From the NCBI GenBank assembly GCA_002269645.1, contig NIVC01000278.1:248001-312000 (forward strand): 64,000 nt of DNA, written 5' to 3'. This document shows, one piece after another, positions 2,289 to 35,900 of the stretch. Origin of the DNA: Macrostomum lignano (Eukaryota). Each line of letters begins with the position of its first letter. Position 1 is the first letter of the stretch. Made by a program: the position numbers and the translations under genes. The notes under the pieces were generated by a model. It ran no database searches. It worked only from the letters and a program-made list of their open reading frames with translations, and was not told where the DNA came from.

Positions 2289-2505
2289 GTTCTCAGCCAA
2301 TATGCAATAATTTATCTGCTCGTCTGAATTCTGTTTCACTAGAAATTCTCTGAATATAAATAATTTTCATAAAAAAATTCATTATAAATGTACAAGCACT
2401 TTTATTCAGCATTTTTGTCATTCCACTCGGGTTTTATGCCGAAGTGACTGAAACGGTTCCTCATCTTTTTAATCCATTGCTGGTGAAAATATTATGTAAA
2501 TGTGC

Positions 2506-2509
<4 letters not shown>

Positions 2510-2598
<89 letters not shown>

Positions 2599-2653
2599 CA
2601 GACAGACTGACAGACAGACAGACAGACACAGACAGACAAACAGACAGACAGAC

Positions 2654-2712
<59 letters not shown>

Positions 2713-2728
2713 CAGACAGACAGACAGG

Positions 2729-2810
<82 letters not shown>

Positions 2811-2821
2811 TACAGACAGGC

Positions 2822-2866
<45 letters not shown>

Positions 2867-2881
2867 GGCAGACAGACAGGC

Positions 2882-2919
<38 letters not shown>

Positions 2920-3093
2920 GCAGACAGACAGACAGACAGGCAGACAGACAGACAGGCAGACAGACAGACAGACAGGCAGACAGACAGACAGGCAGACAGA
3001 CAGACAGACAGGCAGACAAACAGACAGACAGACAGACACAGACAGACTGACAGACAGACAGACAGACACAGACAGACAAACAGACAGACAGAC

Positions 3094-3164
<71 letters not shown>

Positions 3165-3180
3165 CAGACAGACAGACAGG

Positions 3181-3246
<66 letters not shown>

Positions 3247-3301
3247 TACAGACAGGCAGACAGACAGACAGACAGACAGACAGACAGGCAGACAGACAGG
3301 C

Positions 3302-3339
<38 letters not shown>

Positions 3340-3559
3340 GCAGACAGACAGACAGACAGGCAGACAGACAGACAGGCAGACAGACAGACAGACAGGCAGA
3401 CAGACAGACAGGCAGACAGACAGACAGACAGGCAGACAGACAGACAGACAGACAGACAGGCAGACAGACAGACAGGCAGACAGACAGACAGACAGACAGG
3501 CAGACAGACAGACAGACAGGCAGGCAGACAGACAGACAGGCAGACAGACAGGCAGGCAC

Positions 3560-3590
<31 letters not shown>

Positions 3591-3593
3591 GGC

Positions 3594-3638
<45 letters not shown>

Positions 3639-3665
3639 GGCAGACAGACAGACAGACAGGCAGGC

Positions 3666-3706
<41 letters not shown>

Positions 3707-3717
3707 TACAGACAGGC

Positions 3718-3750
<33 letters not shown>

Positions 3751-3765
3751 GGCAGACAGACAGGC

Positions 3766-3803
<38 letters not shown>

Positions 3804-3877
3804 GCAGACAGACAGACAGACAGGCAGACAGACAGACAGGCAGACAGACAGACAGACAGGCAGACAGACAGACAGGC

Positions 3878-3922
<45 letters not shown>

Positions 3923-4007
3923 GGCAGACAGACAGACAGACAGACAGGCAGACAGACAGACAGACAGGCAGGCAGACAGACAGACAGGCAGACAGACAGG
4001 CAGGCAC

Positions 4008-4038
<31 letters not shown>

Positions 4039-4057
4039 GGCAGACTGACAGACAGGC

Positions 4058-4098
<41 letters not shown>

Positions 4099-4129
4099 GG
4101 CAGACAGACAGACAGACAGACAGACAGGC

Positions 4130-4174
<45 letters not shown>

Positions 4175-4227
4175 CTAAGACAGACAGGCAGACAGGCAGA
4201 CAGACAGACAGACAGACAGACAGACAG
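2510..4227. repeat. 1.7 kb (GACA)n microsatellite
   Basis: GACA with GGCA/AACA variants. Confidence 0.98.
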
Positions 4228-5157: not shown

Positions 5158-5810
5158 TTGGGAGGCTGGCCCAGCAACTGGGAGGCTGGCTCAGCAACTG
5201 ACACTCTAAGAGGCTGGCCCAGCAGCTGAGGATCTGGGAGGCTGGCTTAGCAACTGACACTTTGGGGGTTGACCCAGGAACCGAGGATCAGTCCGGCCCA
5301 GCAACTGACACTTTGGGAGGCTCGCCCAGCAACTGGGGATCTGGGAGCTGGCCCAGCAACTGGGGATCTTAAAGGCTGACCCAGCAACTGAGGATCCGGG
5401 AGGCTGGCCCAGCAACTGGGGATCCGGGAGGCTGGCCCAGCAACTGGGGATCTGGGAGCTGGCCCAGCAACTGGGGATCTTAAAGGCTGACCCAGCAACT
5501 GAGGATCCGGGAGGCTGGCCCAGCAACTGGGGATCTGGGAGGCTGGCCCAGCAACTGAGGGTCTGGGAGGCTGGCCCAGCAACTGAGGGTCTGGGAGGCT
5601 GGCCCAGCAACTGACACTCTGGGAGGCTGGCCCAGCAACTGAGGGTCTGGGAGGCTGGCCCAGCAACTGAGGGTCTGGAAGGCTGGCCCAGCAACTGACA
5701 CTCTGGGAGGCTGGCCCAGCAACTGAGGGTCTGGGAGGCTGGCCCAGCAACTGACACTCTGGGAGGCTGGCCCAGGAACCGAGGATCTGGGAGGCTGCTC
5801 AGCAACTGAG
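5158..5810. repeat. 28-bp GC-rich minisatellite, same family as in the snoRNA array
   Basis: (ggaggctggcccagcaactgaggatctg)n. Confidence 0.95.
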
Positions 5811-6125: not shown

Positions 6126-6777
6126 AATTAGGGAGATTTGTTGTTAGTCGATATTATTAAATTGTAATCAAATATTTATCACATCACATCAGTCTGGCAT
6201 AAAAAACGAATAAAGGAAATTAAAAATTAAAAGGCTACATTCCTTTAGTACTACTATATAGTAGTTATTTATTATTTTTTGTTCACGAATAAAAGCGGTG
6301 AATTGTTTGTTGGAATTTCAAATGTTTGACGCAGCGGGATCACAAATTTAAAAAAAGGAAAACTGTTGGGAACAGAATAAACACAAGGAAGGGGAAGCGA
6401 GTGACAAACAGATCCGAGGGTGTGGGGCAACACAACAGAATTAAAACAAAGTTTAAAAGCCGGCATCAGAGAGACAAGATTTTGTTATAATCTTTGCCAA
6501 CAACAACTAAACTTATTAAGGGGAGAAAATCAAAAAAATCTGAATAACTCACTTGTTACTATTAATAGATTTTGATAAAAAAAACACAAAAAAGAGAATC
6601 GTGTCCCTGTTTAGCTACTGTTCAGCCATTCACCAGTAGAAATTAACACATTTTTTGTCTTTTTTTGAAAATGTTTTCATCAAATTATTACTAATCGTTT
6701 GGCGTGTAAGATTATCAATTTAGAGTCTGTCCCTCGCTAGGCGGAACTGATTTATCTTCATCAGAAATCAATGAGAT

Positions 6778-11425
<4,648 letters not shown>

Positions 11426-11554
11426 TCAAATATTAATTGGATTGAATTGCTGTGCGAATTGCGAGCTGGAATGGTAGGAGTTTTTTAGGACAAAATATTA
11501 TTACTACGATACATATCGGTACATACATACTTTAAATCCTCTACTATATAAACC

Positions 11555-12246
11555 TGGAGCCATGGAGATCATGCACCATTGCACACCTAGGGGTCATAGT
11601 GGGCATAATTATCATGGACCATTGCACACCTGGGGGTCATAGTGGTCATAATGATCATGGACCATTGCACACCTGGGGTCATAGTGGTCATAATGATCAT
11701 GGACCATTGCACACCTGGGGTCATATTGGTCATATTGATGATCATGGACCATTGCACACCTGGGGTCATATTGGTCATATTGATGATCATGGACCATTGC
11801 ACACCTGGGGGTCATAATGATCATGGACCATTGCACACCTGGGGGTCATAATGATCATGGACCATTGCACACCTGGGGGTCATAATGATCATGGACCATT
11901 GGACACCTGGGGGTCATAATGATCATGGACCATTGGACACCTGGGGGTCATAGTAGTCAGTCATGGACCATTGTACACCAGGGGGTCAGTAATCATGGAC
12001 CAATGGACCATTACACACCGGAGGGTCATAGTAATCCTGGACCATTGCACACATGGGGGTCATAGTGGTCATAATGATTATGGATGATTGCATACCTGAA
12101 GGACCATTGCACACCTGGGGGTCATGGTGGTCATAATGATCATAGACCAACGTACACCTAGGGGCCATAGTGGTTATAATGATCATAAACCATTGCACAC
12201 CTGGGGGTCATGGTGGTCATAGTGATCATGGGCCATTTCACACCTG
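11555..12246. repeat. Minisatellite upstream of the ARF coding exon
   Basis: (ggggtcatagtggtcataatgatcatggaccattgcacacct)n. Confidence 0.9.
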
Positions 12247-12705
12247 ACCCTATAAAAGAGTATAACACAATACTGTTAGAAATAAAAAGCTGTAAAGTAA
12301 AATTTGTGTATATTTAAGTGTTTCCGCAAACTAGATTAATTAGGAAGAGTATGAAAGACGCGAGTACAACAAAATGTCAGTTTCTTCAGACTCTGAGCAC
12401 CATTGCACTTTTCCTAGGTAAAAATGTACTTTTCACGCAGGGTTCGACTGCTGATAATTACTTGTAGTAGAGACAGTTGGTCATTCTCTAAAATTACAGG
12501 TTAAAAAATTATAGTTAAGATTTAAAGCTAAAAGCAACTGATAAAATTAATTTCAGCGGTGTTCATCCTACTTACCAACAGTAGTTAAAATTTTCTAGAT
12601 ATCCATATTCAAGCAAATCTGAAAATAAAAAATGGGGCCTTTGATAAATGGGATAAAAGCTAATAATACCATAACAACCCACTCTAAAGAAGACAAAAAT
12701 TTTAT

Positions 12706-12770
12706 TCAGGTGCAATTATATTCATTTCACATTAATTCAACAACGAGGAATTCGAAATATTCTTCATCAT
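12706..12770 (-). ncRNA. Box C/D snoRNA family D copy 1 (18S guide, yeast snR57-like target)
   Basis: ATGATGA...GAATTCCTCGTTG-TTGA(D')...ATAATTGCAC-CTGA; antisense to 18S AACGAGGAAUUC. Confidence 0.8.
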
Positions 12771-12973
12771 ATCAGCATCATCAACTAGCTGCTACTGCAA
12801 GTAATAAACTTGGGAAATTTACCTAAAATTAATTGATGAAGTTCTCTTAGTCCGTTTTCATCTACAAGATTACATTAAAGGTCAATATTAAAATCTGTCA
12901 TCATGCAAGAATAAACGCAATTATAAATTCGGCTTATTTTAACAAATATTATATATTTGTAATAAAAATGGAT

Positions 12974-13046
12974 TCAGTAGGAAAAATATAATTTCATTTT
13001 AGCTGAGTGAACAAAATCAACAACGAGGAATTCAATATTTCATCAC
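12974..13046 (-). ncRNA. Box C/D snoRNA family D copy 2
   Basis: GTGATGA, guide GAATTCCTCGTTG, D' TTGA, D CTGA. Confidence 0.75.
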
Positions 13047-13215
13047 AATTTTTGTTACTATGGGGACACAACATGCTTCTAATGTTCGGTTTAAAAAATA
13101 TTCAACTCACAAATTGCCAGGTTCCGCAGCTGAAGCACTGAAAAAAAGTGAGCAATAAATTATAAAATATATATCACTAAAATAAAAGTTTACATACGGT
13201 TATATAAAAACTCAA

Positions 13216-13285
13216 TCATAGGTGAAATTATCGATCACTTGGTCTCAATATTTTGAGTCAGTTGGAACGCCGAAAAGGCTTAAAT
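13216..13285 (-). ncRNA. Divergent family B snoRNA copy (possibly a pseudogene)
   Basis: TTCGGCGTTCCAA-CTGA...AATTTCACCT-ATGA; no clear C box. Confidence 0.45.
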
Positions 13286-13463
13286 AATTTTGTTTGAAAG
13301 TTTTATATTAAGAAATTTAAATTACAGTCAACATCAGATGTCTTACCTGACTACGTGGATATTTTCAATAACATTTCAGACGATCTGCAAAAAAATTGAA
13401 AGCAAGTCAAGATTTATTGTTAAAGCCATATCTTTATCACTGCTTTAAAACAACTAGAAAATG

Positions 13464-13535
13464 TCAGATTATTAATAATTACTCATTTCACTGAGACAAA
13501 CTCAACAACGAGGAATTCTTTATTAATTCATCATA
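13464..13535 (-). ncRNA. Box C/D snoRNA family D copy 3
   Basis: ATGATGA, guide GAATTCCTCGTTG, D' TTGA, D CTGA. Confidence 0.75.
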
Positions 13536-13749
13536 CAACGTACATTGTCCGCTCACACAGCGTATATATAGTATTTAAAAAGTATTACATAACTAACTCA
13601 CATTAACGGCAGGGCTTATATATTTACCCACATTAAAACTCGCGGTGATCATGATCAATCTAAAAATTAGGAATTTCATTAATAAATTTAGCAACAAAAA
13701 CCAGGAACAAAAACATACTATTTCACTATAGGCACTATAGCATTACTAG

Positions 13750-13828
13750 TCAGAGAAAGGTAACTTGTAAGACCAATTCACAGTTTAAGTAATTCAACTC
13801 AGAGGTGTCCCAAGAGTATTGTCATCAT
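13750..13828 (-). ncRNA. Box C/D snoRNA A1 (SNORD58-like 28S guide)
   Basis: ATGATGA...CTTGGGACACCT-CTGA...AGTTACCTTT..CTGA. Confidence 0.85.
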
Positions 13829-14019
13829 TTAGATGTAGAAAGAAAAGAAATTGCATAACAAACTAACATATAGTGCATTACTTACCCCATCAATACTAGC
13901 TGATGTGACATCTGCAGACAAGAACTTGATAATCTGAAATTTAAAGTTTAAAAATTATTTTTGAAACTGTAATCTAGGACAGTAAAAGTGCATGACATAA
14001 CAGTTACGAAGCTGATTGA

Positions 14020-14092
14020 TCAGAGGAAAGGTAACTTGGGGTCAAAATCAAATTTGATAGATCAGAAGGTGTCCCAAAGGTTTTGTCATCAT
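14020..14092 (-). ncRNA. Box C/D snoRNA A2 (SNORD58-like, register +1)
   Basis: ATGATGA...TTGGGACACCTT-CTGA...AGTTACCTTT...CTGA. Confidence 0.85.
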
Positions 14093-14293
14093 AACAATTA
14101 GAGGATCTAAGTGTCAATACTGATAAACAAACTTACAATTTCTTAGGGAAAAACCGGTGCAATAAGGCATCTGAAATTTAAAAAAGAAAATTGCTAGAGT
14201 AACGACAATTTATTGAAATTAGTATAAAGTTGCTACAGATATGAAACTTTAGATATATTATACATATTTAGTTACATGAAACGTACACTGTTT

Positions 14294-14368
14294 TCAGAAA
14301 TGCAAATAATTAAAAATCAAACTGCCTCATTTGAAGCAGTAATAAGGTCTCCAAGTTTTTTTCATCAT
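14294..14368 (-). ncRNA. Box C/D snoRNA family C (28S AGGUCUCCAAG guide)
   Basis: ATGATGA...CTTGGAGACCTT, degenerate D' ATTA, D CTGA. Confidence 0.75.
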
Positions 14369-14529
14369 TGATAAGGTGGGGACTGTATAGTAAGTAGTGA
14401 TAAAACTTGGTACTCACCATGAGTAGTATACCACGGAAAATACGCAATGTTTCTGCAAAAAGTATTAAAAAATCTTTTAAATCACGACTTTATCAATAAA
14501 ATAAGAAAATTTGTAATTTTTTATTAACC

Positions 14530-14597
14530 TCATAGGTGAAAGTGTCATTCATAAACTTTAAAGTTCTGTTGGATCGCCGTAAGCATTTTCTAATCAC
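14530..14597 (-). ncRNA. Box C/D snoRNA family B (18S guide)
   Basis: GTGATTA...CTTACGGCGATCCAA-CAGA...ATGAATG..CTTTCACCT-ATGA. Confidence 0.75.
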
Positions 14598-14649
14598 AGG
14601 TAGATCAATATGTGCGAGTGCGATACACACTTAGGGGCGAAGGTGGAGG

Positions 14650-15228
14650 TTGGCCCAGCAACTGAGGATCTGGGAGGCTGGCCCAGCAACTGAGGATCTG
14701 GGAGGCTGGTGCAGAAACTGAGGATCTGGGAGGCTGGCCCAGCAACTGAGGATCTGGGAGGCTGGCCCAGCAACTGAGGATCTGGAAGGCTGGTGCAGAA
14801 ACTGAGGATCTGGGAGGCTGGCCCAGCAACTGAGGATCTGGGAGGCTGGCCCAGCAACTGAGGATCTGGGAGGCTAGCCCAGCAACTGAGGATCTGGGAG
14901 GCTGGCCCAGCAACTGAGGATCTGGGAGGCTGGCCCAGCAACTGAGGATCTGGGAGGCTGGCCCAGCAACTGAGGATCTGGGAGGCTAGCCCAGCAACTG
15001 AGGATCTGGGAGGCTGACCCAGCAACTGAGGATCTGGGAGGCTGGCCCAGCAACTGAGGATCTGGGAGGCTGGCCCAGCAACTGAGGATCTGGGAGGCTG
15101 GTGCAGAAACTGAGGATCTGGGAGGCTGGTGCAGAAACTGAGGATCTGGGAGGCTAGCCCAGCAACTGAGGATCTGGGAGGCTGACCCAGCAACTGAGGA
15201 TCTGGGAGGCTGACCCAGCAACTGAGGA
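14650..15228. repeat. 28-bp minisatellite
   Basis: (ggaggctggcccagcaactgaggatctg)n. Confidence 0.95.
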
Positions 15229-15472
15229 GCTCAATCGCATGACAACCCACACAGCCTAACCAATATAATTACCATTTATATATATATAGCATAGTATTAA
15301 AAAAGTATTACATAACTAACTTACTTTAACGCCAGGGCTTATATATTTATCCACATTAAAACTCGCGGTGATCATGATCAATCTAAAAAATAGGAATTTC
15401 ATTAATAAATTTAGCAACAAAAACCAGGAACAAAAACATACTATTTCACTATAGGCACTATAGCATTACTAG

Positions 15473-15551
15473 TCAGAGAAAGGTAACTTGTAAGACCAAT
15501 TCACAGTTTAAGTAATTCAACTCAGAGGTGTCCCAAGAGTATTGTCATCAT
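15473..15551 (-). ncRNA. Box C/D snoRNA A1
   Basis: Near-identical to 13750-13828. Confidence 0.85.
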
Positions 15552-15742
15552 TTAGATGTAGAAAGAAAAGAAATTGCATAACAAACTAACATATAGTGCA
15601 TTACTTACCCCATCAATACTAGCTGATGTGACATCTGCAGACAAGAACTTGATAATCTGAAATTTAAAGTTTAAAAATTATTTTTGAAACTGTAATCTAG
15701 GACAGTAAAAGTGCATGACATAACAGTTACGAAGCTGATTGA

Positions 15743-15815
15743 TCAGAGGAAAGGTAACTTGGGGTCAAAATCAAATTTGATAGATCAGAAGGTGTCCCAA
15801 AGGTTTTGTCATCAT
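15743..15815 (-). ncRNA. Box C/D snoRNA A2
   Basis: Near-identical to 14020-14092. Confidence 0.85.
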
Positions 15816-16009
15816 AACAATTAGAGGATCTAAGTGTCAATACTGATAAACAAACTTACAATTTCTTAGGGAAAAACCGGTGCAATAAGGCATCTGAAAT
15901 TTAAAAAAGAAAATTGCTAGAGTAACGACAATTTATTGAAATTAGTATAAAGTTGCTACAGATAAGAAACTTTGGATATATACTTATTTATAAAACTCCT
16001 ACACTGTTT

Positions 16010-16084
16010 TCAGAAATGCAAATAATTAAAAATCAAACTGCCTCATTTGAAGCAGTAATAAGGTCTCCAAGTTTTTTTCATCAT
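16010..16084 (-). ncRNA. Box C/D snoRNA family C
   Basis: Near-identical to 14294-14368. Confidence 0.75.
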
Positions 16085-16264
16085 TGATAAGGTGGGGATT
16101 GCAGTTATAGAACATATTAGAGTTCAATACGCAGAAGCAAGTTTACTCACCATGAGTAGTATACCACAGAATACGCAATTTTGCTGCAATAGAAAGTTGA
16201 AAAAAGATATTTTAGATCACTTAACTTTTTTTCTATAAAATACATTTGTAAATTTCTATTAACC

Positions 16265-16332
16265 TCATAGGTGAAAGTGTCATTCATAAACTTTAAAGTT
16301 CTGTTGGATCGCCGTAAGCATTTTTTAATCAC
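16265..16332 (-). ncRNA. Box C/D snoRNA family B
   Basis: Near-identical to 14530-14597. Confidence 0.75.
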
Positions 16333-16385
16333 AGGGAGATTAATATGTGCAAGTGCAAAACACACTTAGGGGCGAAGGTAGAGAA

Positions 16386-16832
16386 ACTGGGAGGCTGGCT
16401 GAGCAACTGAGAATCTGGGAGGCTGGCCCAGCAACTGAGGATCTGGGAGGCTGGCCCAGCAACTGAGGATCTGGGAGGCTGGCCCAGCAACTGAGGATCT
16501 GGGAGGCTGGCTGAGCAACTGAGAATCTGGGAGGCTGGCCCAGCAACTGAGGATCTGGGAGGCTGGCCCAGCAGCTGAGGATCTGGGAGGCTGGCTGAGC
16601 AACTGAGAATCTGGGAGGCTGGCCCAGCAACTGAGGATCTGGGAGGCTGGTGCAGAAACTGAGGATCTGGGAGGCTGGCCCAGCAACTGAGGATCTGGGA
16701 GGCTGGCCCAGCAACTGAGGATCTGGGAGGCTGGTGCAGAAACTGAGGATCTGGGAGGCTGGCCCAGCAACTGAGGATCTGGGAGGCTGGCCCAGCAACT
16801 GAGGATCTGGGAGGCTGACCCAGCAACTGAGG
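16386..16832. repeat. 28-bp minisatellite
   Basis: Same unit. Confidence 0.95.
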
Positions 16833-17077
16833 AGCTTAATCGCATGACAACCCACACAGCCTAACCAATATAATTACCATTTATATATATATAGCATAGT
16901 ATTAAAAAAGTATTACATAACTAACTTACTTTAACGCCAGGGCTTATATATTTATCCACATTAAAACTCGCGGTGATCATGATCAATCTAAAAATTAGGA
17001 ATTTCATTAATAAATTTAGCAACAAAAACCAGGAACAAAAACATACTATTTCACTATAGGCACTATAGCATTACTAG

Positions 17078-17156
17078 TCAGAGAAAGGTAACTTGTAAGA
17101 CCAATTCACAGTTTAAGTAATTCAACTCAGAGGTGTCCCAAGAGTATTGTCATCAT
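17078..17156 (-). ncRNA. Box C/D snoRNA A1
   Basis: Same boxes and guides as other A1 copies. Confidence 0.85.
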
Positions 17157-17347
17157 TTAGATGTAGAAAGAAAAGAAATTGCATAACAAACTAACATATA
17201 GTGCATTACTTACCCCATCAATACTAGCTGATGTGACATCTGCAGACAAGAACTTGATAATCTGAAATTTAAAGTTGAAAAATTATTTTTGAAACTGTAA
17301 TCTAAAGCAGTAAAAGTGCATGACATAACAGTTACGAAGCTGATTGA

Positions 17348-17421
17348 TCAGAGGAAAGGTAACTTGGGGTCAAAATCAAATTTGATAGATCAGAAGGTGT
17401 CCCAAAAGGTTACGTCATCAT
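17348..17421 (-). ncRNA. Box C/D snoRNA A2
   Basis: Same boxes and guides as other A2 copies. Confidence 0.85.
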
Positions 17422-17630
17422 AACAATTAGAGGATCTAAGTGTCAATACTGATAAATATTATTCAACAAACTTACAATTATTTAGCGAAAAACCGGTGAA
17501 ATAAGACATCTAAAATTGAAAAAGTAATGGGTAGGGTAACGACAATTTATTGAAATTAGTATAAATTTGCTACCGATATGAAATTTTAGATATATTATAC
17601 ATATTTAGTTATAAAACTCCTACACTGTTT

Positions 17631-17704
17631 TCAGAAATGCAAATAACTGAAAATCAAACTGCCTCATTTGAAGCAGTAATAAGGTCTCCAAGTTTTTTCA
17701 TCAT
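17631..17704 (-). ncRNA. Box C/D snoRNA family C
   Basis: Same as other C copies. Confidence 0.75.
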
Positions 17705-17863
17705 TGATAAGGTGGGGACTGTATAGTAGTGATAGAACATGGTACTCACCATGAGTAGTATACCACGGAAAATACGCAATTTTTTCTGCAAAAAGTTGAA
17801 AAAATCTTTTAAATCACTTGAATTTTTAGATAGAATACGAAAATGTGTAAATTTCTATTAACC

Positions 17864-17931
17864 TCATAGGTGAAAGTGTCATTCATAAACTTTAAAGTTC
17901 TGTTGGATCGCCGTAAGCATTTTCTAATCAC
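17864..17931 (-). ncRNA. Box C/D snoRNA family B
   Basis: Same as other B copies. Confidence 0.75.
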
Positions 17932-17982
17932 AGGTAGATCAATATGTGCGAGTGCGAAACACACTTAGGGGCGAAGGTGGAG

Positions 17983-18180
17983 GTTGGCCCAGCAACTGAG
18001 GATCTGGGAGGCTGGCCCAGCAACTGAGGATCTGGGAGGCTGGCCCAGCAACTGAGGATGTGAGAGGCTGGCCCAGCAACTGAGGATCTGGGAGGCTGGC
18101 CCATAAACTGGGAATCTGGGAGGCTGGCCCAGCAATTGACTCTCTGGGAGGCTGGCCTAGCAACTGAGGATCTGGAAGGC
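17983..18180. repeat. 28-bp minisatellite
   Basis: Same unit. Confidence 0.9.
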
Positions 18181-18402
18181 AAGGTATGCTATAGTAACTA
18201 AAAAAATGCATTCTTGAAATCGCTACTTACATTGCAAGTTTCACTGGTGAAGATTATAACGTATAATCAATTTTTGCATTTCTCTTGGACGCTGATCTTT
18301 GAGCTGAAATATATAGAAAAATGAAGTTATGTTTGCGCTAATTAATTCACTATGAAGTAGGTGAAATGATGAAAGACAAAATTATTAAAATATAAACAAA
18401 GA

Positions 18403-18468
18403 TCAGACAAAGGTAACTAGAAAATTGAAGTCACTGTCACTCAGAGGTGTCCCAAGAGTTGTCATCAT
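18403..18468 (-). ncRNA. Box C/D snoRNA A1 (diverged spacer)
   Basis: Only the boxes and both antisense elements are conserved. Confidence 0.85.
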
Positions 18469-18665
18469 TAAAAACTATGACTAGCTTTATCCATCAAACA
18501 TACGAGTTTGAAATGTAATTTTATGTTAAATAACTTACCAAATATTTGGCAGTAGAAAGTGTTCCAATTTTTGTAAGCTGAAATAGTTGAATATGATTTA
18601 ACCATTTTCAAATTTGTTGTAAATTGTATAAAAGTTGAGTCCATACAAATGGCATAGATAATTAC

Positions 18666-18733
18666 TCAGAAAGGTAACTTAGAATTAAAAATCAAATCAA
18701 TTGATCAGAAGGTGTCCCAATTTTTGTCATCAT
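18666..18733 (-). ncRNA. Box C/D snoRNA A2 (diverged spacer)
   Basis: ATGATGA...TTGGGACACCTT-CTGA...AGTTACCTTT-CTGA. Confidence 0.85.
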
Positions 18734-18940
18734 TTGAGCCTAAATGCTTTAATAAAATTACTATAAGGGGTCTAATTTTTAAGATTAACAAAAAACACAA
18801 CAAGCTTACTCACCATAAGTAGTATGCCTAGAAAAACACCGATATTTTCTGCAATTATTAATGAAAAAATACATTCAATAATTGTAATTAAATTAAAGTA
18901 TAAATTTCTTATTATAATCAAGATTAATGATAACTTAACC

Positions 18941-19006
18941 TCATAGGTGAAAGTGTCATTCATAAGGAAAACATCAGTTGGATCGCCGTAAGCAATTTCT
19001 AATCAC
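18941..19006 (-). ncRNA. Box C/D snoRNA family B
   Basis: GTGATTA, CTTACGGCGATCCAA-CTGA, TTTCACCT-ATGA. Confidence 0.8.
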
Positions 19007-19267
19007 AGGTTCATCTATATACAGTATTTGCCCATTTTGCAAGCATATCAGTGACTACAGGTAAACTGTGTCAATGTACATTCAATACATGCTTAATCAA
19101 TACTTACATTGCTAAAGTACTAAACTGGAGTTGATTGACCAACGCTTTGCATTTTCTTTTGTTAGCAAACTCTGAAATTTAAAGTATTATTTAAAAAATT
19201 AAGCTGTGGTTACTACAAATTCAATTTAAATGATGAGACCAAGAAATATTTTAATCTAACAAAAAAA

Positions 19268-19347
19268 TCAGACAAAGGTAACTAGAACCGTGAAATCATT
19301 GCTTTAAGTTTCGACTCAGAGGTGTCCCAAGAGTTATTTGTCATCAT
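19268..19347 (-). ncRNA. Box C/D snoRNA A1
   Basis: Boxes and guides conserved, spacer diverged. Confidence 0.85.
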
Positions 19348-19539
19348 TACAATTAATATGCTAATATGATTAAGACAATACTTTACCATAGCAATGTTGA
19401 ACTTACTTACTTAGACTTAGAATCTCAAGGTTAAAATTGTCTTCTGAAAAGTAAAATTGATTTAAAATTATTTAGTAAAACATAGGTACACACAATACAA
19501 TGATACATACATGTAGTTACTATCATATAAAAATGTTTA

Positions 19540-19611
19540 TCAGCACAAAGGTAACTAGAAGCACAGGTCATTTCAATTTGATCAGAAGGTGTCCCAAATG
19601 TTTGTCATCAT
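19540..19611 (-). ncRNA. Box C/D snoRNA A2
   Basis: Boxes and guides conserved, spacer diverged. Confidence 0.85.
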
Positions 19612-19806
19612 TTGCCATGTACACTGTATAGTTAAACAAAAATAGAAGTTGAACATAGCAAAAAATTACCTCACTGTTTCAGTTGGACTTTGCTCAGCTC
19701 AGCTGCCTCAATTGTCATAGCACAGTGAAAATCTGAAAAAATAGATAAAAATACTTTAAATACTTGATCTTTTTTGTAAAACAAATCTTCATACAAAAAA
19801 ATCTAT

Positions 19807-19872
19807 TCAGAGTTTTAAAAAACTTTTCACACAGACAAACAAAGTCAAAAGGTCTCCAAGTTTTTTCATCAT
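19807..19872 (-). ncRNA. Box C/D snoRNA family C
   Basis: ATGATGA...CTTGGAGACCTT-TTGA...CTGA. Confidence 0.8.
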
Positions 19873-20075
19873 TTAATTTATATGTTTATTAACGATTTTT
19901 GCAAGACAAAAAATAATGCAAATGAAACTTACTATAAGGTAAATCATGATATTAGTTCTGCAATCTGCAGGATATCTAAAATAAAAGTGAAACTATAATG
20001 TAATGCTTTACAATAAAGCATTGATTTTTTCATAAATAAATAAACTTGTTCACTGTAATTAATTTGGTGCCTCTC

Positions 20076-20139
20076 TCATAGGTGAAAATGTCATTCATTA
20101 CTGGGATCTGTTGGATCACCGTAAGCATTTTTTAATCAT
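20076..20139 (-). ncRNA. Box C/D snoRNA family B
   Basis: ATGATTA, CTTACGGTGATCCAA-CAGA, TTTCACCT-ATGA. Confidence 0.75.
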
Positions 20140-20353
20140 AGTTTTCAGCTGCACAGAATAATATAATAATCTAAAATCTTGCATAATTATTAAGCAATTC
20201 AAAAATAAAAATAATGCTATTTACCTGGTTTTGTAGGCTTTCAATGTGACTATAATAAAAAATCTAAAATCTGAAAAGGTTGAAAACATACATACTTACA
20301 TTAAAATAATTATATCAAATCTCTTCAAAAATTCAATTCAAAGTGGATATGGC

Positions 20354-20428
20354 TCAGAAACAGTGTAACTACAATCATTTAAGTCTTGTTCAAGATGATC
20401 ATAAGGTCTCCAAAGATTGTTTCATCAT
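20354..20428 (-). ncRNA. Box C/D snoRNA family C
   Basis: ATGATGA...TTGGAGACCTT-ATGA...CTGA. Confidence 0.8.
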
Positions 20429-20636
20429 ATTTTTTTATATGCTGGAAAACTAGAACAAAGTACATTGAAAAGTAAGTTACCTTTCTTAAACCAAAAAGCA
20501 CTGATTTTAATTGATCCAATATATAAATGCAGATATCTGCTGACACATCCTAAAAAATCAATGCACATATTATGTCAATCATGTGGGAAACTTGGACTAG
20601 ATTAGGCTTAAAAAGCAGTGTAAACAAGATAGCCTG

Positions 20637-20701
20637 TCATAGGTGAAAGTGACATTCATAAAAAGTGATCAGTTGGATCGCCGTAAGCATTTTTTAATCA
20701 T
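20637..20701 (-). ncRNA. Box C/D snoRNA family B
   Basis: ATGATTA, CTTACGGCGATCCAA-CTGA, TTTCACCT-ATGA. Confidence 0.8.
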
Positions 20702-21275
20702 TCATTACTAAAAATCCTTTATAGCTATTCATGCATATTGCCATACCATAGCTAATGAAGTTTTTAGAACTTTTCCTATCTTTTAATGGTGTCAAATTCA
20801 ATGCCAAAAGTTCCTGTATCATTCAATATAATATAGTGAGGATTTAAAGAGTGACAGCAATAGTTTAACTTTAACTTGGCACTCATCAAGTGTCTCATTA
20901 ATTTATTGTAGAATAGCCTGTGTAATCTCCAATTTTGTGTATATATGATGCATAATGCACATGGAAAAAAACTTGTGTGTTTCTGTTCCTGCACCTATTA
21001 TCGATATATTTTCTAAAACATCTGTATAATGTAACTTCCCATAATCCCATTGCTATATTTCAAACTATGTTAGAACTGTAATAAGCCCTATTATAAATTT
21101 CAAATGAACTGCTATAAGTCATTGAAAAAGAACAGAATAGCTTACCATATATCAATTTACATGGCCTATATTCCAGGACCAATATTCATTGATGATTCTA
21201 AAACAAGTAGGCAATAACTTTTTGTAATTTAAGCATACACAGATATAGTTAAACTACTAATGTACAAATGTAAAA

Positions 21276-21352
21276 TCAGCAAAAGGTAACTGGTTAAAGT
21301 GAAGTCATGGTAATTTAGACTCAGAGGTGTCCCAAGAGTATATTGTCATCAT
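21276..21352 (-). ncRNA. Box C/D snoRNA A1
   Basis: Boxes and guides conserved. Confidence 0.85.
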
Positions 21353-21550
21353 GTAAGAATAAATCTATATAACTAATTCAAAAAGTTAATTTTTTAAACA
21401 ATGATAATTAATTGGAGTCATTGAACTTACCACTTTATTATAATCATCATTGATGACAAGATTTTCTTCATTGGATATTTATCTGGAAATGCGAAAAAAT
21501 AAATTTAATAATGTTTATTGACTTAATTTTCAAAAAAGATATAGATGTAT

Positions 21551-21616
21551 TCAGATAAAGGTAACTTAATGTTAGTATCAATTTAAATCAAAAGGTGTCC
21601 TAATTTTTGTCATCAT
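21551..21616 (-). ncRNA. Box C/D snoRNA A2
   Basis: ATGATGA...TTAGGACACCTT-TTGA...AGTTACCTTT..CTGA. Confidence 0.8.
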
Positions 21617-21812
21617 ATGTTACTTTTCAACCTAGGAAATGGAAAAAAAACAATATTTTAAATAATGCACAAACCTTTTTGGTAATTTTATACTAGTCTT
21701 CTACAAAAATAGCCAAGATATCTGCATAGGAAAATGTTTTTATCAATATAATAAGATACAAATACAAAGTGAAAACAATATCTTTAATAGCCACTTCTAA
21801 TTTTTATATTAA

Positions 21813-32900: not shown

Positions 32901-35900
32901 ATATACAAAGGCTTTTCACCCACAATCAGTAACTCTGGTTTCTCTTCATTCCACGATTAAATCTTTCGCCTTTTACTAAAGATTTCCGTGGAGAGGAACA
33001 TTCAATGAGTGTTCCATGATTTGTGAAACCCTCTTCCAAGAAGAGGGTACTAATCAATTAAAAAATAAATCCACTTGTAAAATGCCACACCGCCTTCATC
33101 CATTTTTATTAAAACGAGGTGCCGTAGTAAAGTTCCAAGGAACTCTACCGCAATATTACTGTTTTATTTGATCGAAAGAATATTTAGTACAGATTTCGAC
33201 GGTAATATTTATATTTATGTCGAAATAAAAATAAATAAAACTATTTTTCAATATTTTGCAGCATTTTGCACGCATTTGGGGATAAAAAAGAGGGGAGAGA
33301 AATCCCGCACAAAGAAGGAATCTCATAAAAAATAGGTAATCTAAGAAAATACGTGCAAGAATATTTGAAGGCCTATTGAAATAAAAAGAGAGGCAATTTA
33401 GTAAAAACAGTATGAATAGTAAAGGTGTAAAAAAGCAATTAGGAATATTTGTAAAACAGTTAGGTAAAAGCACAGTTGGAAAAAAGTGTAGAAATAAGCA
33501 ATGAGGAGATCAGAAATTAGCTAGACAGTCAGTCCTAGTGACTGATCAACCGATCTCTGTCTCAGGCATCGAGCTTAGTTTTATTTAGTGCATCTCAGCG
33601 TGTAGTCACTTCAGGTCTGGGAGTCTGCTGGCCAGCCTAACCCTAGGGTGGGAATCCCCTGTTTCTTTCTCGACGCCTCATAGCATCCCAGAGGGCATTG
33701 AGGATGGGGGTTCGACCCGAAGCTCGAGGGGCTTCCGGCTCAATGTGGAAGCTGTGGAGCATGGCTGCCCTCAACTTGAGCAGCCAAGCCACCCCCAGCT
33801 GCTCCATCCTGTACTCTCCTTTAGGTGTACAATGTAACTTCTTTAGCCACTTACGATCTTAGTGTGGTCTAAACTTTTTGAATATTCGGAATGGAACATG
33901 ACTCAGTTCAGTCAAAAGCAGAATAAATTGTCCACAATTGAATTCTCATAACTTTCAACATTTCAAATGGTGCAGGACTACAGTATAAGTAGTATGATGC
34001 AGAAAGCGAACCAACCAGGTGCAAATCAATGTTTCTCTCCAATTGCACTCGCAGTGGACGAATGGCGCCGCAAATGGCATTTGAACAGTCGCTACGGCGA
34101 CTGCACCGTGGAGGACCTTCTGCGCGACATGGCCGACGTTCATCCGACAATCCGACTGCAGGCGGTGCTCACCTGCGCCCACGCCCAGCGATACGTGGCC
34201 GAAGCCGATGACGCGATTCATTTCGACGAGTCAGCTGAGTCAGCCACCTCCAGTCAGCTGCCGCAGTCGTTGATGACTGCCCTGGAGCTGCTGCTGGACG
34301 ATCAGCATGCGCAGGTGAGAGCCTGGGAGATGCACTTTATTAAGCGACATTGTCACACAACTGGCGAGAGGCACCACTGCCATTCCGCCGACTCCCCTTA
34401 GGCAGGCAATTTATCGTTAGGCATGTACACTTCGCTGTTCCTTAGGGGTTGGCCCTCAAGGATGTTAATTGCACGAACCCCCGTGACTAAATATAATACG
34501 CTCGATCGTATGGTGCTCAGAAACTAATGCTCTTATAAAACTAGAGAATTAATTTACTTAAAGTAAAAATGAGACCATGTTCACGAATAGATTTGAAATT
34601 TAGTATATGTAGACTAGCAGTCCAGACCCCCTTCGGGTAGTCAACTATTCTAGATAATTGATGAATAAAAATCTGTCACAAACATTACATTTTAGCTATA
34701 GTTTCTTATGTCTAACACTCTCCCTTATCTTTTGTGTGTAAGATGAAAAACTGCAGTCTAACGCTCGTACCCTATAGTTTGTCAAAATTGGGTTTATAGA
34801 AAAGAGTTGCCTAACAGACACAAGCATGATTGGCAGGTACTCAGCGACAGTAACTGTCCCATCTAAGTTCTATAGGCCCGTGAAACTTTAATTTTTAACA
34901 GACAATATAGCGATGATAATTAAGATGAGTGTCAAAGCACCGTAGTAAGGTTTAGGTTCGTCTTAATTGACAGCCTACAGTACAATTAGTGGCTATCATT
35001 CCTCCTAACAGTCGAGTATTAAAAAATCATACCTGCCCAGGTGCGGCACGCCGCCGCAATCTGCCTGTACCAGACCAACAAGCCCACGCCGCGAGCCGAG
35101 GCCCTCCTACGCGACTGCCTCGTGAACGGCAGCGGCGACGATCGCTGGGCCGCCGTCCAGTGTCTCGCCGGTCAGGGCGATTTTGACAGCGACGTCATTG
35201 GGGCGCTGGTGCACGAGCTCATGACTAATGAGGACACGCTGCGACATCACGTGACCACCCAGCTGCTGGCCAGCCTGAGTCAGCACACGCCACTGGTGCA
35301 CGGCCTGCTGGCTGAACAGCTCAACAGTCCGAGCTGGCGTCGCAGGGTGATCGTCTGCAAGACTCTGCCTACTCTGAATGGTTCGCTTAATCGCGACCTG
35401 GCTCAGAAGCTGAGCCACCTGATGTGGAACGATTCGCATAAGGCGGTGAGGAATTTGGGGAAATTGAATGAACTGGACTCGAACTAAATAGGACCCCAAA
35501 TGACTTTTGAAGATCAAAAGCATCCGTGATCTTCAGAAGCCAATTTTTTATTGTCAATTTAAAGCCGAACCCTTTCTATGACCACCAAATTGAAGCCGAA
35601 CACTCTCTGAGAAAGTTGAATAAAAGTACATACGGGCTGAGAAACCTTACTATTTACTTCATATGACTAGGAAAAACTATTTAACAAATAATCACGTTGA
35701 TGTTGATGGTCACTTCAAGGGCCTATAGATTACAGAAAAGCAGACAACGCCTTTACAATGCCAGTCCGACCAATTTCGCTCAGGTACGTCGCTCGGCGGC
35801 CAAAGCTCTCGGCCAGACAGGACACGGAAAAGACGTCCACGACGATATTCTTCGTCGACTTCGCGAATCCGGCGAACGAATCCGCGCCGATGCTGTTGAG

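What the first reader, a model, noticed from the sequence alone, without database searches (positions are those of the whole stretch)
11466..12620. The snoRNA host may run into ARF as a giant non-coding leader or a polycistron
Seen: the ARF coding exon is preceded by a splice acceptor (ccattccag| at 11467-11466, about 75 nt before the ATG). The nearest same-strand upstream exons are the host micro-exons (12487-12462, 12618-12576). I saw no AATAAA/ATTAAA on the minus strand between them, only an intron-type minisatellite. Inference: either ARF mRNA carries dozens of snoRNA-releasing leader exons, or a host-ARF polycistron is resolved by spliced-leader trans-splicing (known in flatworms). Either would couple snoRNA output to a housekeeping GTPase.
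Basis: inference. Interest (0 to 1): 0.7.

Follow-up and report, generated by a model that had tools for sequence, protein, structure and literature searches.

The report
Flatworm ARF gene behind snoRNA host
In the flatworm Macrostomum lignano, an ARF1 gene lies about 1 kb downstream of a non-coding gene carrying some 27 snoRNAs; its orphan splice acceptor is most simply a site where the species' known spliced leader is added, and the two genes may share one primary transcript, but no transcript data could be reached to prove either point.

Summary
The window is Macrostomum lignano scaffold NIVC01000278.1:248001-312000. The ARF protein is 100% identical to BOX15_Mlig028163.

The sequence features are all present:
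- An acceptor ttccag| sits at 11467-11466, 73 nt before the ATG.
- Host exons are predicted at 12618-12576 and from 12487.
- A 699-bp minisatellite lies between them.
- There is no AATAAA or ATTAAA in the gap.

None of these is statistically strong. About one such hexamer is expected by chance. The acceptor motif has roughly a 25% chance of occurring within 100 nt. The donor at 12461 scores no better than chance GT sites, so 12487 probably opens the host's terminal exon.

M. lignano adds one spliced leader (SL) to about 30% of its genes. The published trans-acceptor motif [T/C]TNCAG fits. The repeat-adjusted gap of 126-296 nt meets the published operon criterion of under 1 kb.

- **Best reading:** SL trans-splicing at 11466 (about 0.55), with the pre-mRNA coming from host read-through (about 0.3 overall).
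- **Giant leader:** a cis-spliced leader would be 1.39 kb with 35 AUGs and is unlikely as the main mRNA (about 0.05).
- **Open rivals:** ARF's own promoter, or a short private 5' exon with a 65-nt intron.

No transcript data were reachable. Public SL, T-fill and RAMPAGE tracks would settle it. This is probably an ordinary member of a known kind.

The parts
11466..11481 (-). Candidate 3' splice (trans-splice) acceptor: pyrimidine tract ctcctaccattcc plus AG at 11467-11466. TTCCAG fits the published M. lignano trans-acceptor motif [T/C]TNCAG.
   Evidence: 11 of 15 pyrimidines upstream, the best AG in 11566-11393; score 5.6 on the host-derived acceptor matrix. Motif from PMC8629364.
11393..11465 (-). 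73-nt 5'UTR part of the first ARF coding exon. It contains no AUG and has 42% GC, against 34% in the 100 nt upstream.
11135..11392 (-). ARF coding exon 1 (ATG 11392-11390, donor GT at 11134-11133).
   Evidence: (tblastn)
6778..7071 (-). ARF coding exon 2 with stop codon TAA at 6780-6778. The spliced product of 183 aa is 100% identical to PAA86490.1/PAA90839.1.
11468..11566 (-). Unique spacer between the minisatellite and the acceptor. It holds TATATA (11550-11545), TTTAAA (11536-11531), the donor-like AAA|gtatgt (GT at 11530-11529), the TATA-like TAATAATA (11503-11496) and the Inr-like CCATTCC (11474-11468).
   Evidence: The promoter-like readings are by eye and are inference.
11567..12265 (-). 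34/43-bp minisatellite (unit ...CCCCAGGTGTGCAATGGTCCATGATCATTATGACC...). It has no canonical poly(A) hexamer and no GT[AG]AG donor.
12266..12461 (-). Unique stretch after the last strong host acceptor. It is either an intron or the body of the host's terminal exon. A candidate variant poly(A) site lies here: AATATA at 12314-12309, CA at about 12292, then a U/GU-rich stretch. No snoRNA and no stable fold were found.
   Evidence: (z = -0.27)
12462..12487 (-). Host exon start with a strong acceptor (tttag| at 12488, score 13.4). The proposed donor CAA|gtaatt at 12461 is weak (3.5), so this may be the start of the terminal exon.
12576..12618 (-). Host exon of 43 nt with consensus sites (ttttcag| ... 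|gtaagtag, donor score 12.0).
12702..12776 (-). Last box C/D snoRNA of the host (family with guide GAATTCCTCGTTGTTGA). Its D box CTGA (12709-12706) overlaps an AATAAA (12706-12701).
12462..21721 (-). Non-coding multi-snoRNA host gene. 29 predicted exons total 1316 nt at 34% GC, with a longest ORF of 62 aa. About 27 C/D snoRNAs sit one per intron. Introns are mostly 200-260 nt. It includes tandemly duplicated units of about 1.6-1.7 kb.
   Evidence: Weak Rfam hits SNORD58 and snR75.

Best explanation
The AG at 11467-11466 is the 5' boundary of the mature ARF1 mRNA body. It is used mainly as an acceptor for the single 35-nt Macrostomum lignano spliced leader (SL). The predicted mRNA is SL + 73-nt UTR + 183-codon ORF. 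The SL's terminal AUG would open only an 11-codon out-of-frame uORF.

The snoRNA host is a separate non-coding RNA. Its last strong acceptor is at 12488, and its terminal exon probably ends by polyadenylation before or near the minisatellite.

Once the minisatellite is discounted, ARF's acceptor lies only 126-296 nt behind the host's last exon on the same strand. The pair therefore has the geometry of an M. lignano operon. The RNA that carries the ARF acceptor is plausibly host read-through transcript, which SL addition caps and rescues.

- **Shown:** the species, the gene structures, the motifs, the spacing, and the non-coding snoRNA host.
- **Inferred:** use of the acceptor, SL addition, the host 3' end, and co-transcription.
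- **My estimates:** SL trans-splicing at 11466 about 0.55; SL trans-splicing with supply from the host promoter (a true polycistron) about 0.30.
For: - **Species and locus:** (P0009, 100% identity; accessions; L002 = window, 100% over 21,392 nt).
- **SL biology:** from PMC8629364. One SL; 30% of genes trans-spliced; 45% of conserved genes trans-spliced; trans-acceptor motif [T/C]TNCAG; operon defined as repeat-adjusted distance under 1 kb with a trans-spliced downstream gene; modal distance about 100 bp; 18% of operons start with a non-trans-spliced gene. From PMC5730564: about 7% of assembled transcripts are multi-gene precursors.
- **Acceptor:** TTCCAG with 11 of 15 pyrimidines is the best AG upstream of the ATG.
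- **No consensus cis donor:** no GT[AG]AG occurs anywhere in 12574-11467, whereas 23 of 28 host donors have it.
- **Weak donor at 12461:** it scores 3.5.
- **Spacing:** 995 nt raw, 296 nt after removing the tandem repeat, 126 nt from the candidate AATATA/CA site.
- **A cis leader would be crippling:** 1389 nt with 35 AUGs.
- **Paralogue:** the paralogous ARF (P0121; L003-L005) has the same layout, a minisatellite, about 60 nt, then aaaattgcag| 38 nt before the ATG. It has no snoRNA host upstream. The orphan acceptor therefore does not need host exons to explain it.
Against: - No transcript, SL-read, CAGE or 3'-end data could be reached.
- YTNCAG alone has about a 25% chance of appearing in 100 nt. 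The acceptor scores only 5.6 against a host median of 11.4.
- A TATA-like run (11503-11496) lies 31 nt before an Inr-like CCATTCC (A at 11472). This offers a TSS at the same spot without any splicing. The paralogue shows a similar TAAATAAA-31 nt-TCAATC pattern (by eye).
- The best donor in the gap is AAA|gtatgt at 11530 (6.3). It could pair with 11466 as a 65-nt cis intron.
- In the published analysis, distances between a non-trans-spliced and a trans-spliced gene are unimodal. Short spacing is therefore weaker evidence for an operon here than for pairs where both genes are trans-spliced.
- The two ARF copies are named g1 and g3 within one transcriptional-unit prefix. If genes are numbered 5' to 3', ARF would be first in its unit. 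This is ambiguous.
Confidence: 0.5

Rival explanations
1. ARF has its own promoter inside the gap (12460-11470) and is transcriptionally independent of the host. Either a short outron is replaced by the SL at 11466, or transcription starts at the Inr-like CCATTCC (A at 11472) and the 'acceptor' is never spliced.
For: - TATATA at 11550-11545 would place a start near 11519, about 53 nt before the acceptor.
- TAATAATA at 11503-11496 lies 31 nt before CCATTCC.
- The paralogue, with no upstream host, has a comparable TATA-like/Inr-like pair. It must have its own promoter or an unannotated upstream unit.
- 60% of trans-spliced genes are not in operons, and 55% of conserved genes are not trans-spliced.
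Against: - The TATA-like and Inr-like matches are short and sit in 66% A+T sequence. They are about as likely by chance as the acceptor motif.
- Only about 300 nt of unique sequence is available for a housekeeping promoter.
- The spacing to a strongly transcribed same-strand unit is operon-like.
Confidence: 0.4
2. ARF has a short private non-coding first exon that ends at 11531 (AAA|gtatgt) and is cis-spliced over a 65-nt intron to 11465. The transcript starts in or just after the minisatellite.
For: - The GT at 11530 is the best-scoring donor between 12575 and 11400 (6.3).
- The 65-nt interval has a pyrimidine tract and a CAG end.
- ARF1 genes of other animals commonly have a 5'UTR intron (my own knowledge, not tested here).
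Against: - GTATGT does not fit the M. lignano donor motif GT[G/A]AG, which the top enriched motif matches in about 65% of donor regions.
- The score of 6.3 is in the low tail of host donors.
- No start site is defined.
- 65 nt is shorter than any host intron; the shortest is 88 nt.
Confidence: 0.15
3. Giant leader: the host's roughly 29 exons are 5' non-coding exons of the ARF mRNA. Exon 12487-12462 is cis-spliced to 11465, and this is the main ARF transcript.
For: - Both genes are on the same strand, and no canonical poly(A) hexamer or consensus donor lies between them.
- In parasitic flatworms many SL acceptors also show some cis-splicing, on average at 66% of sites (PMC12582326). Minor host-ARF chimeras are therefore plausible.
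Against: - The leader would be 1389 nt with 35 AUGs and a longest ORF of 62 aa, which is incompatible with efficient translation of a housekeeping GTPase.
- The donor at 12461 scores 3.5, the level of chance GT sites.
- The 995-nt intron would be the longest in the gene and, with the 88-nt intron before it, one of only two without a snoRNA.
- The paralogue has the same orphan acceptor with no host.
- Acceptors tied to polycistron resolution show the least cis-splicing in flatworms.
Confidence: 0.05

Closest known systems
SL trans-spliced genes and operons of Macrostomum lignano (Wudarski et al. 2017, PMC5730564; Ustyantsev & Berezikov 2021, PMC8629364)
   Same: Same species. The acceptor fits the published [T/C]TNCAG motif. 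ARF1 is a conserved housekeeping gene, the class enriched for trans-splicing. The same-strand neighbour lies at a repeat-adjusted distance under 1 kb, with a repeat inflating the raw distance as those authors describe.
   Different: The upstream unit is a non-coding multi-snoRNA host rather than a protein-coding gene. Whether ARF is flagged as trans-spliced in that annotation could not be looked up here.
Caenorhabditis elegans outrons and operons (SL1/SL2; Blumenthal and colleagues, as summarised in PMC8629364)
   Same: The same logic applies: an acceptor with no upstream cis donor is trans-spliced. A downstream gene in an operon is separated from the upstream gene by 3'-end formation plus SL addition about 100 nt later.
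   Different: M. lignano has a single SL and no SL2-type specialisation. The raw intergenic distance is about 1 kb because of a minisatellite. Operons whose first unit is a snoRNA host are not a described nematode class, to my knowledge.
Vertebrate non-coding multi-snoRNA host genes (UHG, GAS5, SNHG family)
   Same: Many short, poorly coding exons with one box C/D snoRNA per intron. The snoRNAs lie a fixed distance of about 85-115 nt before the next acceptor. The spliced RNA is AUG-rich and without a long ORF.
   Different: In vertebrates these are free-standing polyadenylated units. Here the unit is followed at operon-like distance by a protein-coding gene in a species with SL trans-splicing. 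A 5'TOP start was not established.
Polycistronic snoRNA clusters of trypanosomatids (my own knowledge)
   Same: snoRNAs and protein-coding genes can share one Pol II primary transcript that SL trans-splicing and polyadenylation resolve.
   Different: In trypanosomatids the snoRNAs are cut out of intergenic repeats rather than spliced introns, and all genes are polycistronic. Here it would be a single two-unit case in a metazoan.
Shared cis/trans acceptors in parasitic flatworms (PMC12582326)
   Same: The same acceptor upstream of a coding region can receive either the SL or an upstream cis exon.
   Different: This was documented in cestodes and trematodes, not in Macrostomum. It was lowest at acceptors that resolve polycistrons.

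Membership tests
SL trans-spliced gene (M. lignano) | The species has an SL RNA and widespread SL addition. | tested here: met
   The species was identified. SL biology comes from PMC8629364 and PMC5730564. No SL RNA gene lies in this window, and none is required.
SL trans-spliced gene (M. lignano) | An acceptor lies upstream of the start codon, typically [T/C]TNCAG after a pyrimidine tract. | tested here: met
   TTCCAG at 11466 with 11 of 15 pyrimidines, 73 nt before the ATG. The chance level is about 25% per 100 nt, so this is necessary but not sufficient.
SL trans-spliced gene (M. lignano) | No functional cis donor lies upstream in the same pre-mRNA (orphan acceptor). | tested here: inconclusive
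   No GT[AG]AG occurs in 12574-11467. Non-consensus donors exist at 11530 (6.3) and 12461 (3.5).
SL trans-spliced gene (M. lignano) | cDNA or reads carry the SL joined to the exon. | not testable with these tools
   Only genomic contigs carry the protein. Supplements held no entry for it.
SL-resolved operon (criteria of Ustyantsev & Berezikov 2021) | The genes are adjacent on the same strand with no opposite-strand gene between them. | tested here: met
   The gap holds only ORFs derived from the minisatellite and no RNA family hit.
SL-resolved operon (criteria of Ustyantsev & Berezikov 2021) | The repeat-adjusted intergenic distance is under 1 kb. | tested here: met
   995 nt raw minus 699 nt of tandem repeat gives 296 nt. 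The distance is 126 nt from the putative poly(A) site.
SL-resolved operon (criteria of Ustyantsev & Berezikov 2021) | The downstream gene is SL trans-spliced and both lie on one primary transcript. | not testable with these tools
   This needs SL reads, T-fill reads, or nascent or long reads across 12487-11465.
Non-coding multi-snoRNA host gene (UHG/GAS5 type) | There is one snoRNA per intron, with conserved boxes and guides. | tested here: met
   About 27 C/D units in four families. In the family A alignment the C box, both guides and D'/D are invariant. Weak Rfam hits to SNORD58 and snR75 fall below gathering score; nothing passes at gathering threshold.
Non-coding multi-snoRNA host gene (UHG/GAS5 type) | The spliced exons lack a meaningful ORF. 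| tested here: met
   1316 nt of exons with a longest ORF of 62 aa. No CDS is annotated upstream of ARF in the GenBank record.
Non-coding multi-snoRNA host gene (UHG/GAS5 type) | The gene has a 5'TOP start and yields a polyadenylated spliced RNA. | not testable with these tools
   The start near 21721-21730 and the 3' end near 12292 are only guesses from sequence.
Class I ARF GTPase (ARF1) | A full-length Arf domain with high identity to ARF1. | tested here: met
   88% identity to human ARF1 over exon 1. PF00025 is precomputed for the identical protein, and about 91-93% identity to animal ARF1 proteins.

The most novel reading that the evidence does not exclude
ARF1 has no promoter of its own. 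A non-coding host gene with about 27 snoRNAs is the promoter-proximal unit of an SL-resolved operon, and ARF1 is rescued from its read-through transcript by spliced-leader addition. One promoter would then set both the dosage of rRNA-methylation guides and the supply of ARF1 mRNA. This would be an operon type (ncRNA host first, protein gene second) not described in metazoans, to my knowledge.
Probability: 0.3. Interest if true: 0.5.

Novelty: new member of a known kind. Interest (0 to 1): 0.3.

Why it matters
If the polycistron reading is true, it would add a non-coding snoRNA host gene to the kinds of units that can head an SL-resolved operon in an animal. It would link ribosome-modification guide output and a secretory-pathway GTPase to one promoter.

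There is also a practical side. M. lignano transgenesis relies on cloning 1-2.5 kb upstream of a gene as its promoter (PMC5730564). For ARF1, an obvious candidate for ubiquitous expression, that fragment would hold only host exons, snoRNAs and a minisatellite, and it might be inactive.

If the reading is false, this is an ordinary trans-spliced or conventionally initiated housekeeping gene next to a snoRNA host. Its status is probably already recorded in the species' SL-read annotation.

Tried and rejected
1. **Direct transcript evidence.**
   - After the homology search, the exact protein and its paralogue were found only on genomic GenBank scaffolds, with no RNA-derived contigs.
   - The other cluster members are foreign ARFs.
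   - The gene identifier is absent from searchable full texts and held supplements.
2. **Footprinting between the two genomic copies.** This was useless. The copies are identical from 12663 to about 6700 apart from repeat copy number.
3. **Conserved linkage in the paralogue.** There is no snoRNA host and no sequence similarity upstream of the paralogous ARF.
4. **A hidden snoRNA or structured RNA in 12461-12290.** It would have argued that the stretch is an intron. None was found.
5. **Rfam at gathering threshold.** It finds none of the snoRNAs. My first box/stem scanner was too strict and was replaced by a box listing.
6. **SL RNA gene in the window.** It is absent.
7. **Coding potential of the gap on either strand.** There are only repeat-derived ORFs.
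8. **Literature on ARF trans-splicing in flatworms or snoRNA hosts in operons.** Nothing specific turned up.
9. **Absence of AATAAA/ATTAAA as evidence for read-through.** I rejected this argument, because about one is expected and variant signals are present.

Full report
**What is there.**

On the minus strand the sequence reads ...tttgtcctaaaaaactcctaccattccag|CTCGCAATTCGC... The AG is at 11467-11466 and the first ATG of an ARF reading frame is at 11392-11390.

A tblastn search with human ARF1 finds two coding blocks. With the flanking splice sites these are 11392-11135 (|gtgaga) and 7071-6778 (ccgcag|, stop TAA). The spliced 183-aa product is 100% identical to two GenBank proteins of Macrostomum lignano, BOX15_Mlig028163g1 and g3.

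One of the two genomic places that encode it is the window itself. L002 matches the window at 100% over 21,392 nt. This places the window at NIVC01000278.1:248001-312000 of assembly GCA_002269645.1.

**The upstream gene.**

From about 21721 to 12462 the minus strand carries 29 predicted short exons of 26-73 nt with GT-AG borders. Of the 28 donors upstream of the last one, 23 fit GT[AG]AG. Introns are mostly 200-260 nt. Each holds one box C/D snoRNA about 85-115 nt before the next acceptor.

The snoRNAs fall into four families with 12, 5, 6 and 3 copies. In the 12-copy family the C box, two 10-11-nt guide elements and the D'/D boxes are invariant, while the spacers vary in sequence and length. 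One copy gives a sub-threshold Rfam hit to SNORD58. Nothing passes Rfam's gathering scores.

The joined exons total 1316 nt at 34% GC, against 57% in the ARF CDS. Their longest ORF is 62 aa. No CDS is annotated there in GenBank. This is a non-coding multi-snoRNA host gene of the UHG/GAS5 type.

**The gap.**

Between the host and ARF lie three segments:
- 196 nt of unique sequence (12461-12266);
- a 699-bp 34/43-bp minisatellite (12265-11567);
- 100 nt of unique sequence (11566-11467).

However, only about 1.0 is expected from composition, and only about 300 nt is non-repetitive. The absence therefore carries little weight.

Variant hexamers are present. AATATA at 12314-12309 is followed by a CA about 17 nt later and then by a U/GU-rich stretch. 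TTTAAA is at 11536 and AATAAT at 11502.

No Rfam family, stable fold or non-repeat ORF is present on either strand.

**How good are the splice sites?**

I built a matrix from 28 host exons.

| Site | Score | Comparison |
|---|---|---|
| Acceptor at 12488 | 13.4 | Host acceptor median 11.4 |
| Donor at 12575 | 12.0 | Host donor median 10.9 |
| Donor at 11530 (AAA\|gtatgt), best in the gap | 6.3 | Would form a 65-nt intron with 11466 |
| ARF acceptor at 11466 | 5.6 | Host acceptor median 11.4 |

The exon that starts at 12487 is therefore well supported, but its 3' border is not. It may be the host's terminal exon.

The ARF acceptor is the best AG between the minisatellite and the ATG, with 11 of 15 pyrimidines upstream. 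YTNCAG occurs at 0.0025-0.0035 per nt in this window, so finding one within 100 nt of an ATG has roughly a one-in-four chance.

**What is known for this species.**

From PMC8629364:
- M. lignano adds one 35-nt spliced leader (CGGTCTCTTACTGCGAAGACTCAATTTATTGCATG) to about 30% of its genes and to 45% of genes conserved with human.
- The top motif at trans-acceptors is [T/C]TNCAG.
- About 15% of genes are assigned to operons. An operon is defined as same-strand neighbours less than 1 kb apart after subtracting repeats, with the downstream gene trans-spliced.
- The modal repeat-adjusted spacing is about 100 bp.
- 18% of operons start with a non-trans-spliced gene.
- For pairs of a non-trans-spliced gene followed by a trans-spliced gene, the distance distribution is unimodal.

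From PMC5730564: about 7% of assembled transcripts are multi-gene precursors. Genes cut from one transcriptional unit share a name prefix.

From PMC12582326: in parasitic flatworms the same acceptor often receives both the SL and an upstream cis exon. This happens least at acceptors that resolve polycistrons.

**Putting it together.**

TTCCAG fits the trans-acceptor motif. No consensus cis donor lies within 1.1 kb upstream. The repeat-adjusted distance from the host is 296 nt, or 126 nt from the candidate AATATA/CA site. By the published rule, host plus ARF would be called an operon if ARF is trans-spliced.

An SL-capped ARF mRNA would carry the SL's AUG as an 11-codon, out-of-frame uORF ending 40 nt before the ARF AUG. 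The 73-nt UTR itself has no AUG.

By contrast, a cis-spliced leader made of the host exons would be 1389 nt with 35 AUGs. It would also depend on the chance-level donor at 12461. I regard it as possible only as a minor by-product.

**The paralogue as a control.**

A second ARF (P0121, 182 aa, three scaffolds) has many synonymous differences from this one. It has no detectable similarity upstream and no snoRNA cluster. Yet it shows the same layout: a different minisatellite, about 60 nt, then aaaattgcag|TCAATC 38 nt before the ATG.

The 'orphan acceptor just upstream of the ATG' is therefore a property of the ARF genes, not of the host. That is what SL addition predicts, and the giant-leader idea does not.

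The same comparison also feeds the rival reading. In both genes a TATA-like A/T run lies 31 nt before an Inr-like element that overlaps the putative acceptor. Here it is TAATAATA at 11503 followed by CCATTCC. In the paralogue it is TAAATAAA followed by TCAATC. A transcription start at that point, without splicing, cannot be excluded from sequence.

**What could not be done.**

- The two copies of this locus (L001 and the window) are identical from 12663 to about 6700. They differ by 1.5-5% outside that tract. Conservation therefore says nothing about function in the gap.
- No RNA-derived contig, supplementary table or paper reachable here reports the 5' end of this mRNA.
- The locus names (ARF = g1 and g3 of prefix Mlig028163) imply that another 'gene' g2 shares the prefix. 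Its identity and the numbering rule are unknown.

**Verdict.**

My probabilities are:

| Reading | Probability |
|---|---|
| SL trans-splicing at 11466 | about 0.55 |
| of which supplied by host read-through (true polycistron) | about 0.30 overall |
| of which supplied by ARF's own promoter | about 0.25 overall |
| Start at or near the acceptor, no splicing | about 0.15 |
| Private short 5' exon with the 65-nt intron | about 0.15 |
| Host exons as the dominant ARF leader | about 0.05 |
| Any other arrangement | about 0.10 |

SL trans-splicing and operons are already catalogued genome-wide in this species. This locus's status probably already sits in the public SL and T-fill tracks. The finding is therefore a likely new member of a known kind. 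It has one modestly unusual possibility: a non-coding snoRNA host as the first unit of an operon.

Noticed in passing
window 6700-12663 versus L001 (NIVC01000103.1): The two genomic copies are base-for-base identical across about 6 kb, apart from copy number of the intron minisatellite. The tract covers the host's last two exons, the gap, the whole ARF coding region and intron 1. The flanks differ by 1.5-5%. This suggests recent gene conversion or an assembly effect of the duplicated large chromosome.
   Followed up: partly
window 7592-8923 (+): A 443-aa ORF with a piggyBac-type transposase domain (PF13843 DDE_Tnp_1_7, E = 4e-56) lies inside ARF intron 1 on the opposite strand. It is identical in both genomic copies.
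   Followed up: partly
window 32930-33048 (+): A full-length U5 spliceosomal snRNA gene (Rfam RF00020, 90.9 bits against a gathering score of 40).
   Followed up: no
window 5178-5810, 14645-15228, 16387-16833, 17979-18180: The same 28-bp minisatellite (CTGGGAGGCTGGCCCAGCAACTGAGGAT) sits in three host introns and again just past the ARF 3'UTR. A different 29-bp minisatellite fills ARF intron 1 (7083-7291 and 9579-11086). Repeats of one family thus flank ARF on both sides.
   Followed up: no
window 13600-18200 (-): The host gene contains a tandemly duplicated unit of about 1.6-1.7 kb with four snoRNAs (families A, A, C, B) in about three copies. The second genomic copy (L001) has fewer units, so the snoRNA array is copy-number variable.
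   Followed up: partly
window 12701-12709 (-): The D box (CTGA) of the last snoRNA overlaps a canonical AATAAA. This is the only canonical poly(A) hexamer near the host 3' end, and it lies inside an intron about 85 nt before exon 12618.
   Followed up: no
window 2505-4227: A 1.7-kb (CAGA)n microsatellite with about 435 copies.
   Followed up: no
window 6778-11392 versus 12462-21721 (-): There is a sharp compositional contrast between neighbours on one strand. The ARF CDS is 57% GC and the host exons are 34% GC. The paralogous ARF uses A/T-ending codons at the same positions (for example GGA ATG TTT GCT AAA against GGC ATG TTC GCC AAG).
   Followed up: no
L003/L004/L005 about 9428-9960: The paralogous ARF also has a minisatellite, with an unrelated 30/60-bp unit, ending about 60 nt before its candidate acceptor. 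A repeat directly upstream of the 5' end is thus shared by both ARF genes, although the repeats are unrelated.
   Followed up: partly
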